A DNA stretch of 64,000 bases from Dimorphilus gyrociliatus (Eukaryota; Animalia; Annelida). Both the position numbers and the translations under genes were made by a program. The notes below the pieces were generated by a model, which saw only the letters and a program-made list of their open reading frames with translations, did no database searches and had not been told where the DNA came from. Of this stretch, positions 18,173 through 25,453 are shown one piece after another (the stretch's first letter is position 1; each line of letters begins with the position of its first letter). Where the stretch lies: the NCBI GenBank assembly GCA_904063045.1, contig CAJFCJ010000002.1, positions 1,944,422-2,008,421 on the forward strand. The letters run 5' to 3'.

Positions 18173-18473
18173 CTGTTTTAAATGAAAGACGTCCTAGTGT
18201 GTAACACTTCCTCCCACTTAATTGTCTGCAATAGCAGACGACGTAACATTTTTTTAAAAACAATTAATTTTGAGCCTATTTGATAATGTTGTAGCAATGT
18301 ATCGTTAAGCATCAAGATAGTATAAAACAAAACTTAACATTTACGTTGTAGTGAGTGTTTATTGGCAATTCTTGGTCAGTTAATTTTTATTTGAATAATC
18401 ACTAAAAAAGACAAATGACAAAAGTAAAAAGAAAACTCAAACACCATTGGAATTATGAAAATATCCAATAGAT

Positions 18474-21400
18474 TTAATTCAGGTTTGTTGACATTATTCG
18501 CAAGAGATCATCTTGAGTCATACGACCTACTGCCCTCTCTTTTGGTTTTCCATCTTTAAATAAAACAAACAAAGGATAACCTTTAATCTCTTGTTTAGCA
18601 CAAGTTGCTTTATTCTTTCCGACACATTTAACAGCCGCAATTCTATTGTTCCACAACTTCCCAAAAGCTTCACAGTCGCGTGCACTAAATACACACACTT
18701 GACAAGCAGGTATATAGAATAATACAATCGAATTTGGATGATCATTCAACCATTGGGTATAATTTTGATGAGATAGATGGGCAACTTGTGTATCCTCATT
18801 TAAAGACCATTTAGCCAGAGAATAAATTGGAGGAGATGGCAGAGGATATTTAATAAATTCAATGATATCTTCAACGTGCGTACCTAATTTATAAACTTCC
18901 TTTTGTTCGCCAAATAAATAGTAAATAACTGTTTAATATATTAAGAGAAAAATTACTTATTATCCAAAATAAAGAATAATTGAAAATATACTCTGAGTCT
19001 CCGTAATAGATCGATTTTTCATAACTTCAGGAAACAAATCTGCATTCATTACAGCTAAAGTTCCGAAAATATTTTCTTTCAGGAGTATTTGATTAGCTTC
19101 AGCAATGCTATCTTTCATAATATCAAACTTTTTAGACCCTAAAATGATAGAATGTAATTAATTAATTAATTTAATTAATTATATAAATAAACTAGAATAA
19201 ATTAAAATATTACATGGAAAGTAATAAAAGATTAAAACAGATGTATAATTATGAATTGTTTCATTTAGTGTTTCATTTGAAAGATGAGTTATTGATTCAT
19301 ATCCAGGTGATTTAGCCCAAAGTGAGTTTATATCTTCTTCAGGTAAAGATGTAAGATCAAAAGGACTTAATGGACTTTTAAAGAGTAGGGAAAAAAATAG
19401 TAATTATAATTTAGAAAATATAAATATCAATAAAATTTAAATACTCCAAGAGAAATCCATATATATCTTCATTGGCGAAGTTATTATTGTTTTCTGCTAC
19501 CTTCTTTCCATTTCTATTTAATTAAATACTTAATTAGTTAATATTTAAACATTAATTTAACTAAAAATTAGTTTGAAATTTACTCAATAAAAATTATAGT
19601 TGGGAATTTTCTTAATCTAAACTTCATTGGTAATCTCTTTTCGGTTGATACATCAACGGCGGTAAATTTATAATTGAACTCTTTCTATTAAATAACAACA
19701 TTTTTAATGGAATAACATACTTTTCCAATATACTTTAAATCATAGTATTAACCCTATACGATGCAATCATCTTGGCAACTTTTATAAAATTTGGTCGAAG
19801 AGCTTTAAAAGTCATTGTGCTCGGATCGTAAAATATAGCAATCACTTCGTCGTTTTTTTCAAAAATTTCCTTAGCGTTTTGCGAGGTTAAACTCTGAACT
19901 AATTTCGTTGGATCGTGACGTGACCAATACATATCGTGGTTATCTACAATTTCTGTAGGTTCATTTGCTTCAGGACTATTGAGAAAAGTATTATGAAATT
20001 TTTACTTATACTGTATTATTCTATATTAGCAACTTACTCTTTTAAAAAATTTAGCAGATCGAATGAAGTGTACAGCCTTATATCTCTAGTTCTCTTACCA
20101 TTTCTAATTGTTTAAAATAGGATAATTATAATTTATTTTATATACGAAATAACGATTTACTGACTCATAAAGGAATATTGAATTGCCCTCTTCATCGGCA
20201 CCTTCTTCCTTTCGTAAAACTTTTTGTGCTTGAATATCAACAGTTGCTAATTTAATTTTAAAGTCCATCCCTTTTGAAACCTTTGCTGTTTCAGCAAATT
20301 CTTCCATCATTATATCGCAAAATTCCTCCGTACAATCTAGATTTAAAAGGAACAACGAGACAAATTATTCATTTGGAACTTCAATTGAACATTGCCAATA
20401 TTTACTTGAATCGAAAAATAAGACAAGAGTTCTTTCATTCTTTGCTACAAAATCTTTAAAAGTAAATTGAATGAGATGATTGAGATGTTCACTTCCAGCA
20501 ATATTAATCCACTTCATTGCAGGATCAAAATCAGATTTCGGTATAAGTTTATCCGGATTGGACATAAATTCAATAATTTGACCATGGTTTTTTGTTAAAC
20601 GATATTCAAATTTCCTATCCATATTTCGGCTTAAATAGTAATCTACAAAATAGTATTGTTATGCAAATTAGTTTATCTAGGATTATTTTTTTCTATACTA
20701 ACATGTTGGTGCTTTTGAAACTTTAAATATATCTGCAATATCTGGATAAAAATCAATATTTAAAGAAAGAAGTTTAACTCGATGACCAGTTTTAGCTAAT
20801 ATTTCAGCTGCTTTTGCGAATTCTTTCTTTCTAAAATCGCATTCAGCGCACCCTTTATGAATTGAAATTAACAGATTTTTAGAATATTAATATTAATCCT
20901 AGAAATGGAATATTTACATGCAGACGTGAAAAATAAGAGAAGATGATTATTCGTTTGGGATTCTTGGTTAATTTCTAAATAAGAAGTGATTTTTTTAACA
21001 TGTTCCGATCCAGTTATATTTTCCCACCCTCCCTCTGGATTAAGAGCTTTGCTGGGATCCTTTAAAAATGAATAGAGACTCTCTTCATCATTATAACCCC
21101 TGTATTGCTTTCCGTTTTCATATTCAAAAAATATAAATGTGGGATATCCTTTAACTTTATATTGTTGACAAATTTCCTTTTCTATAATACAATTGACAGC
21201 ACCAAAAAAGTACTGCTTATTTTCTGAAAAATTTCCAGAAAGTTTCTCAAAAACAGGTTTCATCTTTTTACAATGACCACACCAGGGGGCGTAAAAGATA
21301 ATAAAACTTGATTTAAACTTTTTTAGAGTTTCACTGTTAGGATTAAAGATAGGTTTATAATGCATAAATTATCGTAGTTGACATCTTTTACGTGAAATTG

Positions 21401-24400
21401 GCGGAATTCAAATGAGAAATAGTGCTATTTTCACTAATTTCCCAACTATCCGGTATGTCTGATTTCCATTTTGTTGGATCTTTAAGAAATTGTAATAAAT
21501 CATCTGTTTTTCTTCCTCCGGTATAAGACTTCGAAAAGGAGCCATTTTCGTAATATAAAACTAATAATGAGTGAAATGGTTTACATCTTTAAATAGCTTT
21601 CCTTTGGTAACTTACTGGTTGGATAACCCCTAACACTAGCTTTTTGAGCTAGGGAAGGATGAACTGTAGCATCTACAGCTCCAAGTACTCCTGTATAATT
21701 TTTCTCTTTAGCCATCTTAGCAGCTGCCGCAAAATCAGGTTTCATAGCTTTGCAATGACCGCACCAGGGTGCATAGTACATAATCAAAGCACTTGGATAA
21801 GTCTGAATAAAAGCTTCAAAATTATCAACTGTTATGTGGTATACAGAATCGGATCCATCAAGTCCCTTCCAATCTTCTGCAGCTGGAGCTTTCTTAAACT
21901 CTTCCTTTTTAGGAGGAACTACCTTTGGTATCTTCATCTTAACAGGACTATGAAAAAAATTATATTTTTTTGTTCAAACAAAACTTGAGTTCTTTTATTC
22001 GATATTGTTCAATTCGTATATAATTTTGCAGTATGAAAAAAGGTAGACAATCGAAATATTTATATATTAGTTCAAGAAAAGATGAAGAATATTAAATAAG
22101 CTCAAATTTTCCAACTATATAACGTCTATTAGCACAAGTAAGCAATCTAACGGTGGACAAAATTCTGTATTTATTTTGTGCAATGCCAACCGGGAGATCA
22201 ATTAGGTATCTTTCTATAAATATATATAATTATTGCATATTTATATATATTTACTTTTACATATTTAACCTAACTATATACGGAATAATATCGTCTTTGG
22301 CACCGTAAACCAACTAGTCCACCACCCTGTTAAAAATTGTTCGGTATATTATAGCAATTTTTTTTATATTTTATAAAGTATATTCGATTCCATTCCATTC
22401 TTCATAAACGTTGAGCTAACTTTTTAAAGTTCGTTGTGTTTCTGGTGGATTTGGCTAAAAGTAAAAAGAAAAAGAGATAGTAAATCAAAGCACACCACTC
22501 TCAGAAATCAACTGTTAATCTTTAATTGAAAAGAGATAGAGTTTAATATAAATATCGAAAAGTTTTAATAAATCACTTCACATTGTGCTTTTTATACTAA
22601 AAGTATAAAGATTAATACTTACTTTTTCATAAAGTCCACCAAATCGGATGCTGTTCTGGAGCGATCGTATTCCATATTTTTGGCCCCATTTTTAAAGTGT
22701 ATTACTACAAAATCATATTAATTTGCTTTAGATAAAGTTATTCTTTCGATGTCTTCAGATAGTATTGAAAAATAAACTTACGCGTAGGATATCCTTTAAC
22801 TTCAAATTTCTTAGCGATTGAGTTGTGAATAGTTGCATCTACAGCAGCTATGTGACCTTCGATTTTCTCATCAACTAAAATTTTTGCGGCTTCAGCATAA
22901 GCCGGCTTCATATTCTTGCAATGGCCGCACCATGGTGCATAAAACATAACGAGAACACTTGAATGACTCTTAACAAAACTGTCAAATGATTCATCTGACA
23001 AATGATTTACATTACTAGCATGTGGAATTTCAGTCCAAGCATCTTCTGCCGATTCGGTTGGTGGAGGAGCTTGTACATTGGCTGCGCTATCGGGGTCACG
23101 GATAAACTTTAAGAAGTCAGCCTTTTCCCGTCCGCCAGCATATTTCGTTCCGGCTTTACCGTAATTGAAATATTTAAAAGTAGGATAGCCGTTTACATCG
23201 CTGCATAAGCTCTGATGCTTAATACAATTCACAGCTGCTAAACTCAATTTGGGATTATCTTGGATTTCCTCTGCAGCAGATGTGAATTCCGGTTTAGCCT
23301 TTTTGCAGTGTCCACACCAAGGGGCGTAAAACATTACTAAAGTGTGCTTCTTCTTTTTAATGAAACCTCTATAAGAGAGCAACTTGCTTAGAAAAGCAGA
23401 ATTTATTTAATATTTTATTTAACTTACTTGAAGTTATCGCTAGTCAAATGTTCAACAGCAGATTCAGATTCATCCCATTCAGGTTCTGGTGGGGGTGGAG
23501 GTTTAGGATCCTGGATAAATTCGATAATCTTTTCTTTCGTTCTTCCGTTAAATTCAAAATCTGCCAATTTACCATTTTCAAAATATTTGATAGTTGGGAA
23601 TCCCTTAACTTCAAATTTCTTGGAAACTTTTTCGTGCTTTGTAGCATCTACAGCAGCTAAAGAGCCCTCAATTTTCTCTTCCTTCATTTGAATTGCTGCA
23701 GCTTCATAATCAGGTTTCATGGCTTTGCAATGACCACACCATGGAGCGTAGAACATGACTATAACTTTAGAATTTTTAGCTATATGATCATCGAATGTTT
23801 CATCAGTCAAATGTTCAACTTCATTCTCTTCTTCAGCCCATTCCTTTTCCTTTTCTTTTGGTTTTGGAGGTTGAGGATCGTCCAACCAGCTGATAATCCC
23901 TTCTTTTGTATTCTCACCACCAAATGTCATATGTTTCTTTCCTCCTTTAGTAAAGTACAAAATAGTTGGAAATCCAGTTATATTATATACTTCTTTTACA
24001 TCTGAATTTTCTGGTTTATTAACGTCCATTGCGGCAATTACATATTTATTTTTAACTTCAGTAGCTGCTGCAGCATAGTCTGGTTTAATTTTTTTACAGA
24101 ATCCACACCATGGAGCGTAGAACATAAGAAGCGTGGGCCTTGGATCTTTTCTGAAAAGTTTGTTCATTGCGGCTTTGTTGTCCAGATGAACAACATCTGT
24201 TGCAGTAGGATCTTCGTCCCATGGAATATCACCGGTAGGATCATTTAAGAAAGCTGTCATGGAGCGTACCGTCATTTGTCTGTCATAGATTTTAGTAAAT
24301 TCTCCATCCTTATAATGGCGATACTCGTGATCAACTGGAGAAATTTTCATCTTTTTGCACAGCTTTTTAGAATCGCTAATGAAAATAGAATAATAATAGA

Positions 24401-25124
24401 ATGAATTCTTTTCACTTAAAAATCATATTATTACCCGCAATCAATTAATACAATTGATGCAATGCCTTTTATTTCTGAAGCAACATCGCCCAATAAAGTT
24501 AACCGACTCACCGGTAGGTTTCCGGATTTTGAAGCAACCATCAAAACATTTGTATTCGTCCTTAAGTACTTTTTAAGAGCTATAATACGAATAAACAATG
24601 AAATATAGAAAACATTAACAACGTATAATTACTATTCTAAGCAAAATAGAGTATATAATCAATAGACCGAAATACAAACCTTTAATATCATTGAATCTCT
24701 CTAATAACTTTAATTTATCTTTTCGAGTTGCTTCGGAAGAGGGTCGAATGAATTGCTATAAATTATTTGAGGGAAAAGATGTAAATTATAAATTTTATCG
24801 ATATCAATAAATCATAGAAACAATTCGTTAAGAAATAAAATCGAAATGTTTTAAAATTGAAAAAAAAATTGTTAGACAGTCATCACTCTTTTTTTTATTG
24901 TTATTCACACTACCTCCTTATTGGAATTGTCAATAATTGTTTCACCAGCTTCAATGACTTTTAGCTATCAATATTTAAAATATTTATATATTGCTGCCTA
25001 TATTTATTCTTGTAAGAAAATCAATTACAATTTCAACATTTCAAAAAATATCTATTGATTTGTTGAAATTATTTCAACTTACCGACACTGACAAAAGAAC
25101 TAGGAATATTAAATATCCCCTCAT
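18474..25124 (-). CDS. PDIA5: PDIA5/PDIR-type protein disulfide isomerase; long form has a signal peptide, a b domain and 11 a-type thioredoxin folds
   Basis: Signal peptide MRGYLIFLVLLSVS. PDIA5-type b domain (KKYLRTNTNVL..IDCGDSKKLCKKMK..YKDGEF..PWDEDP). Active-site motifs in order: CGFC, CGHC x5, CAEC, CTEEFC, none, none, CQVC. All introns traced with consistent phases to the stop at 18474. Confidence 0.9.
22424..22454 (-). CDS. PDIA5: Alternative terminal exon of PDIA5 encoding (N)QIHQKHNEL*, an ER-retention-like C-terminus
   Basis: Polypyrimidine tract plus TAG acceptor (ttctttttacttttag). It is phase-2 compatible with donor ATGAAAAA|gtaagt at 22623. In-frame TAA follows CAC AAC GAA CTT. 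A minus-strand AATAAA lies at 22170-22175. Confidence 0.8.
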
Positions 25125-25453
25125 GCTTCACCGGTAAATGAGAGGGCTTGTTCTAACTATGCGACACCATGATAAACAAAGTGTCTTTATACAAAAAAGT
25201 AACCAATCATGGTACTACAAATCAGCATGCCGGTTCGAACATGCATTGAAATCGCTCTTGTCAATCCATTTTTTCGAATTTTAGGTTAAATTAAACAATG
25301 TTTTAAAAATTTTAACTGACAGGTCGGTTCAAAAACTTATTCTCTACAACTTATAACTAAATATAATCGACTTTGATACTTACGGCAATAAATAAACACA
25401 AGAAAAACAAACTAATTGTTTTTCCTGCCATTTTGCATGCCACGTTTTTAACA

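What the first reader, a model, noticed from the sequence alone, without database searches (positions are those of the whole stretch)
18474..22623. PDIA5 alternative-last-exon switch: ER-retained 4-domain enzyme versus an 11-thioredoxin form with no retention signal
Seen: the phase-2 donor after catalytic domain 4 (22623) can splice to a 31-nt exon ending NQIHQKHNEL* with a downstream AATAAA. It can also splice to the acceptor at 21947 (N-PVKMKIPK), which opens a fully in-frame 13-exon extension adding 7 thioredoxin folds (CGHC, CGHC, CAEC, CTEEFC, two without Cys, CQVC) and ending STNLN with no KDEL-like motif. The extension is rich in N-x-S/T sequons (NGS, NST, NFT, NFS, NIT, NET x2, NYT x2), while domains 1-4 have few. 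Known: vertebrate PDIA5 has 3 catalytic domains and a KDEL-type end. Inference: splicing or polyadenylation choice toggles between an ER-resident PDI and a giant secreted or surface redox scaffold, for example for cuticle or mucus disulfide cross-linking.
Basis: partly seen in the sequence, partly recalled or inferred. Interest (0 to 1): 0.78.

Follow-up and report, generated by a model that had tools for sequence, protein, structure and literature searches.

The report
PDI gene with two alternative ends
A protein-folding enzyme gene of the tiny marine worm Dimorphilus gyrociliatus can end early with a "stay in the ER" tag. It probably can also skip that end and add seven more thioredoxin domains with no tag; a related species keeps both ends, but the RNA junction for the long form has not yet been seen.

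Summary
On the minus strand, a PDIA5-like gene (25431..22623) ends at a phase-2 donor. That donor fits two acceptors.

- **Short end.** Acceptor 22454 gives NQIHQKHNEL*, with AATAAA at 22175-22170.
- **Long end.** Acceptor 21947 opens 13 in-frame GT-AG exons down to 18474. This adds 7 Trx-like folds and ends STNLN.
- **Organism.** The window is Dimorphilus gyrociliatus. It matches the public model DgyrCDS1382, a faulty model that also fuses the next gene, ENOSF1.
- **RNA contigs.** They show the 22623->22454 joint in two studies and a short mRNA ending at 22158. All 12 introns of the extension are spliced as predicted. The 22623->21947 joint is not seen. One contig reads straight through the 476-nt spacer. 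Contigs drop rare forms, so this does not settle the question.
- **Related species (contig L001).** It keeps the mini-exon (…KHNEL*) and its poly(A) region. It keeps all 13 extension exons (dN 0.31, dS saturated) and also ends without a KDEL-type motif. Its first extension exon has no Met before the active site, so it must be spliced from upstream. N-glycosylation sequons are enriched and conserved.

Verdict: a conserved alternative-last-exon switch is likely (about 0.68). Secretion of the long form is inference. It is a new variant of a known kind.

The parts
25384..25431 (-). First coding exon 1a, MAGKTISLFFLCLFIA. It is a hydrophobic signal-peptide-like start, in phase 0.
   Evidence: Sequence and model.
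25083..25124 (-). Alternative first coding exon 1b, MRGYLIFLVLLSVS. It also looks like a signal peptide and is the one used in the public model DgyrCDS1382.
   Evidence: Which first exon the RNA uses could not be read.
22623..24755 (-). Common exons 2-6: 24755-24680, 24579-24435, 24375-23428, 23368-22782 and 22704-22623. They encode the N-terminal non-catalytic domain and four catalytic Trx domains (CGFC, then CGHC three times). They end in the shared phase-2 donor AAAAA|GTAAGT.
   Evidence: Model. Pfam PF00085 hits at E 1e-46 to 1e-51. RNA joints 22704/22782 and 23368/23428 in X1 and X2.
22158..22454 (-). Proximal terminal exon. Its coding part is 22454-22424 (N)QIHQKHNEL-TAA, followed by a 3' UTR of about 266 nt that ends at the poly(A) site near 22158.
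   Evidence: Joint 22623->22454 in X1 and X2, and the X1 contig ends at 22158. The orthologous exon in L001 at 903-933 encodes (N)QGKIKHNEL*.
22170..22175 (-). AATAAA poly(A) signal of the short form. The region around the cleavage site is conserved in L001.
22243..22362 (-). Non-coding block of about 120 nt, 80-92% identical to L001, although synonymous sites are saturated. It lies in the short form's 3' UTR, which is also the long form's intron. It is a candidate control element.
   Evidence: No Rfam match and no stable fold, z = 0.46.
21948..22157 (-). Spacer between the proximal poly(A) site and the distal acceptor. It is present in the X2 read-through contig. It lies inside a 300-nt stretch without ATG (22235-21936) that ends at the ATG at 21935.
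21616..21947 (-). Extension exon 1. It encodes an inter-domain linker (N)PVKMKIPK...DWKGLDGSDSVYHIT followed by a CGHC domain. Its acceptor fits the phase-2 donor at 22623.
   Evidence: The L001 orthologue at 1517-1848 has the same length and phase and has no Met before MFYAPWC.
18474..21560 (-). Extension exons 2-13, with coordinates as in the observation check. They complete the first extension domain and encode six more Trx-like domains (CGHC, CAEC, CTEEFC, none, none, CQVC). The end is STNLN-TAA (stop 18476-18474), with ATTAAA at 18478-18473. The transcript contig ends at 18432.
   Evidence: All exons are conserved in L001. dN is 0.31 and dS at least 1.8.

Best explanation
This is one gene of Dimorphilus gyrociliatus with two alternative 3' ends. 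It descends from the invertebrate PDIA5-like family, whose usual layout is one non-catalytic domain, five or more CGHC domains and a KDEL-type end.

After the fourth catalytic domain, the phase-2 donor at 22623 meets two acceptors.

- **Proximal acceptor (22454).** It lies 168 nt downstream. It adds ten residues ending in HNEL, which fits the ER-retrieval pattern [KRHQSA][DENQ]EL. The transcript is then cut about 12 nt after the AATAAA at 22175-22170. The product is a 638-aa ER-resident oxidoreductase. This step is shown by RNA joints and by conservation.
- **Distal acceptor (21947).** If the proximal acceptor and poly(A) site are passed over, the same donor joins 21947. Thirteen more exons add seven Trx-like domains. 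Three keep CxxC in both species, one keeps a CxxxxC motif in both, two have no cysteine motif, and the last has CQVC here but SQIC in the relative. They carry many N-glycosylation sequons and no retrieval motif. The product is a 1527-aa luminal glycoprotein that the KDEL receptor should not retrieve, so it is probably exported. The fusion is inferred from comparative evidence. Export is inferred from the missing motif alone.

The choice would be a competition between splice site and poly(A) site, of the kind known from immunoglobulin mu. The conserved 120-nt block in the proximal 3' UTR is a candidate control element. That last point is speculation.
For: **Short end**
- The joint 22623->22454 appears in two studies. 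The X1 contig ends at 22158, just after the AATAAA.
- The mini-exon, its ...KHNEL* end, its 3' UTR blocks and its poly(A) region are conserved in the related species.

**The extension is real coding sequence**
- All 12 of its introns are spliced as predicted in X2, and three of those joints also in X1.
- All 13 exons are conserved in L001, 11 of them with identical length and all with the same phases. Identity is 58% over 896 codons. dN is 0.31 and dS at least 1.8.

**The extension needs the upstream exons**
- In L001 the first extension exon is open from the acceptor and has no Met for 55 codons. In D. gyrociliatus a stop lies 9 codons upstream of the acceptor, and in L001 the frame opens about 11 codons upstream.
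- No ATG-bearing exon can hide in the D. gyrociliatus spacer.
- The junction restores the repeat motif F-x-x-[DN]-P. The intron sits at the position and phase that recur inside the repeat array.
- The first extension domain groups with domain 5 of the same gene. The second groups near the domain-4 and terminal-domain clade of other PDIA5-like proteins.

**The extension looks luminal**
- It has 12 and 14 sequons in the two species against about 6.3 expected (P = 0.019 and 0.002). Eight lie at shared columns. There are none in domains 4-5.
- The Cys pairs AVNC...C and AVKC...C are conserved.

**No retrieval motif on the long end**
- The long form ends STNLN here and VTRYF in L001. The 16 multi-domain homologues read all end in a four-residue [KRHQ]-[DE]-E-L motif, except the one with no PDIA5-type N-terminus (P0071).
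Against: - No RNA contig shows 22623->21947. The 5401-nt X2 contig uses the HNEL acceptor and is continuous from 22454 to 21616, so in that data set the direct joint is absent or minor.
- The 300 nt upstream of the in-frame ATG at 21935 hold no ATG. Only 2% of 300-nt windows here lack one. That is what a 5' UTR of a separate transcript would look like in D. gyrociliatus.
- The distal intron would be 675 nt, ten times the species median of 66. The species removes short introns best (PMC7854359).
- The public model that joins the two parts is ab initio and wrong elsewhere, so it does not count as support.
- Secretion, regulation and glycosylation are untested.
Confidence: 0.68

Rival explanations
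1. There are two separate genes. The PDIA5-like gene always ends at HNEL. The downstream block is an independent transcript that starts in the spacer and is translated from the ATG at 21935 (MKIPK...). The product is a cytosolic 895-aa multi-thioredoxin protein with no signal peptide.
For: - No direct joint appears in the contigs, and the X2 contig is continuous across the spacer.
- A 300-nt stretch without ATG lies before ATG 21935, which has A at position -3.
- The genome is compact, with short intergenic regions (PMC7854359).
Against: - The Met is not conserved. L001 has PVKAPKPKKKK..., with no Met until MFYAPWC inside the first domain, yet the frame is open and constrained from the acceptor onward.
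- Sequons are enriched and conserved, and structural Cys pairs are conserved. Both point to the ER lumen.
- The exon begins in the middle of a linker motif, at a position where the repeat array has its introns.
Confidence: 0.08
2. The extension is not translated. It rides as a long spliced 3' UTR on read-through HNEL transcripts, or is a decaying relic of a once longer gene. Only the short protein is made.
For: The only full-length contig (X2) has the HNEL stop upstream of the extension. The extension evolves about three times faster than domains 4-5.
Against: - A 2.7-kb frame stays open in two species whose synonymous sites are saturated.
- Eleven of 13 exon lengths are identical.
- dN/dS is about 0.17 or less, and changes are biased to the third codon position (263/195/456 by position).
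- The CxxC motifs of extension domains 1-3 are kept in both species.
Confidence: 0.04
3. The fused long protein is made, but it is not a secreted or surface product. It stays in the ER by other means, such as binding to partners that carry KDEL or simply its size and glycan-dependent quality control. It would serve as a larger-capacity luminal folding scaffold. The two ends may be a constitutive mixture rather than a regulated switch.
For: - All known relatives with 5 to 12 Trx domains are ER-tagged, so the ancestral workplace is the ER.
- The read-through and HNEL forms coexist in one data set.
- Nothing tested here bears on localisation.
Against: The lack of a retrieval motif on the long end holds in both species, while the HNEL end is kept on the short one. 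That is easiest to explain if the difference in retrieval matters. There is no transmembrane segment or other retention feature in the last exon.
Confidence: 0.2

Closest known systems
Vertebrate PDIA5 (PDIR)
   Same: It has a signal peptide and an N-terminal non-catalytic Trx-like domain with the ...LCKK...YKDG...DPTGD... signature. CGHC-type catalytic domains follow, joined by proline-rich linkers, and the end is KDEL-type (KEEL, from established knowledge). The short isoform here has this layout.
   Different: The short isoform has four catalytic domains instead of three and ends in HNEL. The same gene can probably continue into seven more domains.
Invertebrate expanded PDIA5-like proteins: annelids and molluscs with 5-7 CGHC domains, corals and Hydra with 7-8, amphioxus 'PDIA5' isoforms of 1307-1565 aa
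   Same: They share the N-terminal domain and domains 2-5, which are orthologous in the domain tree. The number of tandem Trx domains varies, as here.
   Different: Each of them read here ends in a four-residue [KRHQ]-[DE]-E-L motif after the last domain. None was seen with an internal retrieval-tagged terminal exon. The D. gyrociliatus long end lacks the motif, and its last five domains are strongly degenerate.
Immunoglobulin mu secreted/membrane switch and other alternative-last-exon genes with a skipped terminal exon (established knowledge)
   Same: One donor faces a proximal terminal exon with its own poly(A) site and a distal acceptor. The outcome changes the C-terminus and so the destination of the protein.
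   Different: Here the proximal end gives retention and the distal end gives its loss together with about 900 added residues. No regulator is known, and the distal joint is not yet seen in RNA.
QSOX1 long and short isoforms (established knowledge)
   Same: It is a thiol-oxidoreductase of the secretory pathway whose alternative 3' processing decides between a retained or anchored form and a secreted form.
   Different: QSOX1 toggles a transmembrane anchor, not a KDEL-type motif, and it adds no catalytic domains.
ERdj5/DNAJC10 and TXNDC16 (ERp90), multi-thioredoxin ER proteins
   Same: They are long arrays mixing catalytic and non-catalytic Trx-like domains in the ER lumen.
   Different: They belong to different subfamilies (J domain; no PDIA5-type N-terminus). 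No homology beyond the Trx fold was found here.

Membership tests
PDI family, PDIA5-like subfamily | Catalytic thioredoxin domains with a CGHC-type motif | tested here: met
   Pfam PF00085 hits at E 1e-17 to 1e-51 on the exons of domains 2-7 and at 5e-11 on domain 12. The CGFC and CGHC motifs are listed.
PDI family, PDIA5-like subfamily | PDIA5-type N-terminal non-catalytic domain, and orthology of the following domains | tested here: met
   D. gyrociliatus domains 2-5 each group with the same-numbered domains of Capitella, Owenia, Lamellibrachia, Crassostrea, Haliotis, Gigantopelta and Lingula. The sources name many of these hits PDIA5-like.
PDI family, PDIA5-like subfamily | N-terminal signal peptide | tested here: inconclusive
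   Both candidate first exons encode short hydrophobic N-termini. No signal-peptide predictor was available, and the first exon used in RNA could not be read.
PDI family, PDIA5-like subfamily | C-terminal ER-retrieval motif [KRHQSA][DENQ]EL | tested here: met
   The short isoform ends HNEL here and HNEL in L001. The long isoform does not meet this feature: it ends STNLN or VTRYF.
Alternative last exon (skipped terminal exon type) | A proximal terminal exon that is used, with its own stop and poly(A) site | tested here: met
   The joint 22623->22454 appears in X1 and X2. The X1 contig ends at 22158, 12 nt after the AATAAA.
Alternative last exon (skipped terminal exon type) | The same donor joined to the distal acceptor in RNA | tested here: inconclusive
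   Not seen in Logan contigs of two runs. Contigs drop minor paths, and raw reads were not available. A junction pattern found nothing in JGI metagenome contigs. Comparative evidence requires the joint.
Alternative last exon (skipped terminal exon type) | Both ends maintained by selection | tested here: met
   The mini-exon, its 3' UTR and its poly(A) region are conserved, and so are all 13 distal exons with dN/dS of about 0.17 or less in L001.
Operon or SL trans-spliced downstream cistron | Spliced-leader trans-splicing in the species | tested here: not met
   The genome paper reports no spliced leaders in 5' UTRs and no operons in D. gyrociliatus (PMC7854359). This was read from the paper, not re-computed.

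The most novel reading that the evidence does not exclude
A conserved and regulated switch turns an ER-resident disulfide isomerase into an exported, heavily glycosylated enzyme or scaffold of 12 thioredoxin-like domains. That product would work outside the ER, for example in cross-linking of cuticle, mucus or egg envelope. The choice would be set by factors that bind the ultra-conserved 120-nt block (22362-22243) and the poly(A) region of the proximal terminal exon.
Probability: 0.22. Interest if true: 0.75.

Novelty: new variant of a known kind. Interest (0 to 1): 0.55.

Why it matters
PDI-family enzymes are held in the ER by a C-terminal KDEL-type tag. How cells export some of them on purpose is an open question.

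This locus would be a hard-wired, evolutionarily conserved answer. One gene would make a tagged four-domain enzyme or an untagged form with seven extra domains, depending only on 3'-end choice.

It also shows how tandem thioredoxin arrays grow and degenerate, from catalytic CxxC domains to non-catalytic and better-conserved ones. It corrects a chimeric public gene model. And it offers a compact test system for competition between a splice site and a poly(A) site, since the introns are about 66 nt and the decision region is 675 nt.

If the long junction proves absent, the locus becomes a case of a conserved multi-thioredoxin ORF with no visible route to translation. That would be puzzling in its own way.

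Tried and rejected
- **Placozoan origin.** I guessed this from the AT-richness, the tiny introns and the coral-tank sample. It was wrong. P0233 shows the window is Dimorphilus gyrociliatus.
- **Operon or SL trans-splice acceptor at 21947.** Rejected, because the species has no spliced leaders or operons.
- **Stop-codon read-through from HNEL into the extension.** Both acceptors lie in the same genomic frame (507 nt apart), but 13 stops lie between them. Rejected.
- **A hidden signal-peptide exon in the spacer.** The only ATGs (22405, 22398, 22393, 22262, 22238) open ORFs of 13 codons or fewer, and the X2 contig is unspliced there. Rejected.
- **Orthologues of the last extension domain.** The representative search found only generic PDI matches of 25-35% identity. 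The word search over the extension found only the public model itself at high identity. So the distal domains appear confined to this lineage.
- **Short ORF fragments bridging the junction in the protein collection.** None was found. That search did yield P0002, which led to the sister-species contig.
- **Junction pattern in JGI metagenome contigs.** No match.
- **The conserved 3' UTR block as a known or structured RNA.** No Rfam hit, a fold z-score of 0.46, and only one compensatory pair with two sequences.
- **The public model DgyrCDS1382 as support for the junction.** Rejected. It mis-splices extension exons 9-11 against the RNA joints and fuses ENOSF1.
- **Polymorphisms between X1 and the window.** There are 10 synonymous and 2 non-synonymous changes upstream, but only 1 and 1 in the extension. 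That is too few to use.


Full report
**1. What is in the sequence**

The feature lies on the minus strand. A six-exon common part encodes a hydrophobic N-terminus and a PDIA5-type non-catalytic domain. Four catalytic thioredoxin domains follow (CGFC, then CGHC three times). The exons are 25431-25384, 24755-24680, 24579-24435, 24375-23428, 23368-22782 and 22704-22623.

The last common exon ends ...ATGAAAAA|GTAAGT, in phase 2. Two acceptors fit this donor.
- Acceptor 22454 gives N-QIHQKHNEL-stop.
- Acceptor 21947 gives N-PVKMKIPK and opens 13 further exons. All have AG/GT borders and all are in frame. They run down to a TAA at 18476-18474.

The short protein is 638 aa and the long one 1527 aa. 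A profile built from catalytic domains of relatives finds 12 full-length Trx-like units in the long form. The extension units carry CGHC, CGHC, CAEC, CTEEFC, none, none and CQVC.

**2. The organism and the public annotation**

A word search with an amphioxus relative returned P0233, 'DgyrCDS1382 [Dimorphilus gyrociliatus]', 1848 aa. It matches my model over almost its whole length. So the window is the miniature annelid D. gyrociliatus.

That public model uses a second signal-like first exon (MRGYLIFLVLLSVS, 25124-25083) and joins DFMK directly to NPVKMKIPK. However, it mis-splices extension exons 9-11 against the RNA joints and runs on into the next gene, ENOSF1. It is an ab initio chimera and I do not count it as evidence.

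The genome paper gives a median intron of 66 bp and best removal of short introns. It reports no spliced leaders or operons (PMC7854359).

**3. RNA evidence**

Only assembled contigs of two runs could be laid.

- **X1, a coral-tank metatranscriptome.** It holds a 2135-nt contig with the joints 23428/23368, 22782/22704 and 22623/22454. The contig ends at 22158, 12 nt after the AATAAA at 22175-22170. This is the short mRNA with its poly(A) site. X1 also holds low-depth fragments of extension exons, with three of the predicted joints.
- **X2, organism A, 2017.** It holds a 5401-nt contig that carries every one of the 12 predicted extension introns spliced out, and it ends at 18432. It too uses 22623->22454. 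It is continuous from 22454 to 21616, so the 476-nt stretch between the HNEL stop and the distal acceptor is retained.
- **The missing joint.** No contig shows 22623->21947.

Contig assembly removes short, low-coverage alternative paths, and a few read-through molecules suffice to bridge two transcripts. So this shows that the direct joint is not dominant in X2. It does not show that the joint is absent.

A pattern matching either junction found nothing in JGI metagenome contigs.

**4. The case for a separate downstream gene**

The first in-frame ATG of the extension is at 21935 (MKIPK...). It is preceded by 300 nt without any ATG. Only 2% of 300-nt windows in these 64 kb lack an ATG. That pattern fits a 5' UTR. 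The resulting protein would have no signal peptide.

**5. Comparative evidence that decides against it**

A 77-aa hit (P0002) led to an 11.5-kb genomic Logan contig, L001, from run SRR23372229. It has 29% G+C. It holds the same locus in a related species, with ENOSF1 downstream as here.

- **The short end is conserved.** The donor context is identical. A mini-exon at 903-933 encodes (N)QGKIKHNEL-stop. The middle residues have changed, but KHNEL and the stop are kept. The first 18 nt after the stop, a block of about 120 nt (22362-22243, 80-92% identity) and the region around the AATAAA and cleavage site are conserved. Meanwhile synonymous sites are saturated.
- **All 13 extension exons are present.** They lie at L001 1517-4984 with canonical borders and the same phases. 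Eleven have identical lengths. There is no stop.
- **The extension is under selection.** Over 896 codons, amino-acid identity is 58%. Differences by codon position are 263/195/456. dN is 0.31 and dS at least 1.8. The common domains 4-5 have dN 0.11. The extension evolves faster but is clearly constrained. Its cysteine-free domains (62-63% identity) and the CxxxxC domain (71%) are better conserved than the CxxC domains before them (48-57%).
- **The Met is not conserved.** L001 reads PVKAPKPKKKKAPSKKF..., and its first Met lies in MFYAPWC, inside the first domain. Yet the frame is open from the acceptor onward in both species. A stop lies 9 codons upstream of the acceptor here, and in L001 the frame opens about 11 codons upstream. 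This exon therefore needs an upstream coding exon with a phase-2 donor. The end of domain 5 is the only candidate.
- **The spacer hides no start exon.** In D. gyrociliatus its few ATGs open ORFs of 13 codons or fewer.

**6. Independent signs that the extension enters the ER**

- Sequons number 12 and 14 in the two species against about 6.3 expected from composition (P = 0.019 and 0.002). Eight sit at the same alignment columns, several with changed middle or third residues (NETL/NSTL, NRSI/NFTI, NYTQ/NYSE). Domains 4-5 have none.
- The extra Cys pairs of PDIA5-type domains are kept in both species: AVNC...C in extension domain 2 and AVKC...C in the last domain.
- The junction recreates the repeat motif F-x-x-[DN]-P found before every linker. 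The intron at 22623 sits at the same position and phase as introns inside the array.

**7. Family context**

Lophotrochozoan PDIA5-like proteins have one non-catalytic and five CGHC domains. Haliotis has six, Gigantopelta seven, corals and Hydra seven to eight, and amphioxus nine to twelve. Apart from P0071, which has no PDIA5-type N-terminus, all sixteen read end in a retrieval motif of four residues: KEEL, KDEL, RDEL, REEL, HDEL or HQEL.

In a domain tree, D. gyrociliatus domains 2-5 fall with their orthologues. The first extension domain is sister to domain 5 of the same gene (support 92/57). The second sits at the base of the clade of domain 4 and the terminal domains (92/92). The last five are on very long branches. 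This suggests the extension grew out of the original C-terminal part of the same gene. The support is moderate.

No orthologue of the distal domains was found outside this lineage.

**8. Reading**

The best explanation is an alternative last exon of the 'skipped terminal exon' type.
- **Shown:** use of the proximal end, its poly(A) site, splicing of the extension, and selection on both ends.
- **Inferred:** the 22623->21947 joint and hence the 1527-aa protein, at about 0.7.
- **Inferred from the missing motif alone:** export of the long form. It lacks a retrieval motif in both species (STNLN and VTRYF).
- **Speculative:** regulation through the conserved 3' UTR block, which has no Rfam match and no stable fold, and any role in cuticle or mucus.

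The read-through HNEL transcript seen in X2 is what one expects when the poly(A) site is skipped but the strong, nearby proximal acceptor is not blocked. This is especially so in a species tuned to short introns.

**9. Novelty**

A full-text search for PDIA5 with alternative splicing, KDEL and secretion found nothing comparable. I rate it a new variant of a known kind: a PDI-family gene with lineage-specific domain expansion, and alternative 3'-end choice that changes protein destination.

Noticed in passing
window 25431-25384 and 25124-25083 (minus strand): Two candidate first coding exons each encode a short signal-peptide-like start (MAGKTISLFFLCLFIA and MRGYLIFLVLLSVS). Each ends in phase 0 with GTAAGT, and each can join exon 2 at 24755. 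The public model uses the second. The X2 contig extends 315 nt beyond exon 2, but those letters could not be read.
   Followed up: partly
window 22362-22243 (minus strand); L001 about 1040-1150: A non-coding block of about 120 nt is 80-92% identical between the two species, although synonymous sites are saturated. A second block of 18 identical nt follows the HNEL stop. There is no Rfam match and no significant fold.
   Followed up: partly
window 18172-16178 (minus strand); L001 6872-7529: An ENOSF1-like gene of the enolase superfamily (MR_MLE) starts about 260 nt after the end of the long PDI transcript, on the same strand. The synteny is conserved in the related species. The public model DgyrCDS1382 (named 'Mitochondrial enolase superfamily member 1' in UniRef) wrongly fuses the two genes.
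   Followed up: partly
window 19684-19214 (minus strand): The public gene model skips or mis-splices extension exons 9-11, giving ...MIASYRKWKEGSKKFDIM.... The X2 RNA joints 19753/19684, 19584/19513 and 19445/19374 support the exons given here.
   Followed up: yes
window 18928-18474 versus L001 4533-4984: The CQVC of the last domain is SQIC in the related species, so that domain is probably not redox-active. The second extension domain is CGHC here and CSHC there. The third is CAEC here and CPDC there.
   Followed up: yes
run X1 (coral metatranscriptome): D. gyrociliatus transcripts occur in a coral metatranscriptome, with 15 listed differences over about 2.7 kb of laid contig. The worm evidently lives in that coral tank or sample.
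   Followed up: no
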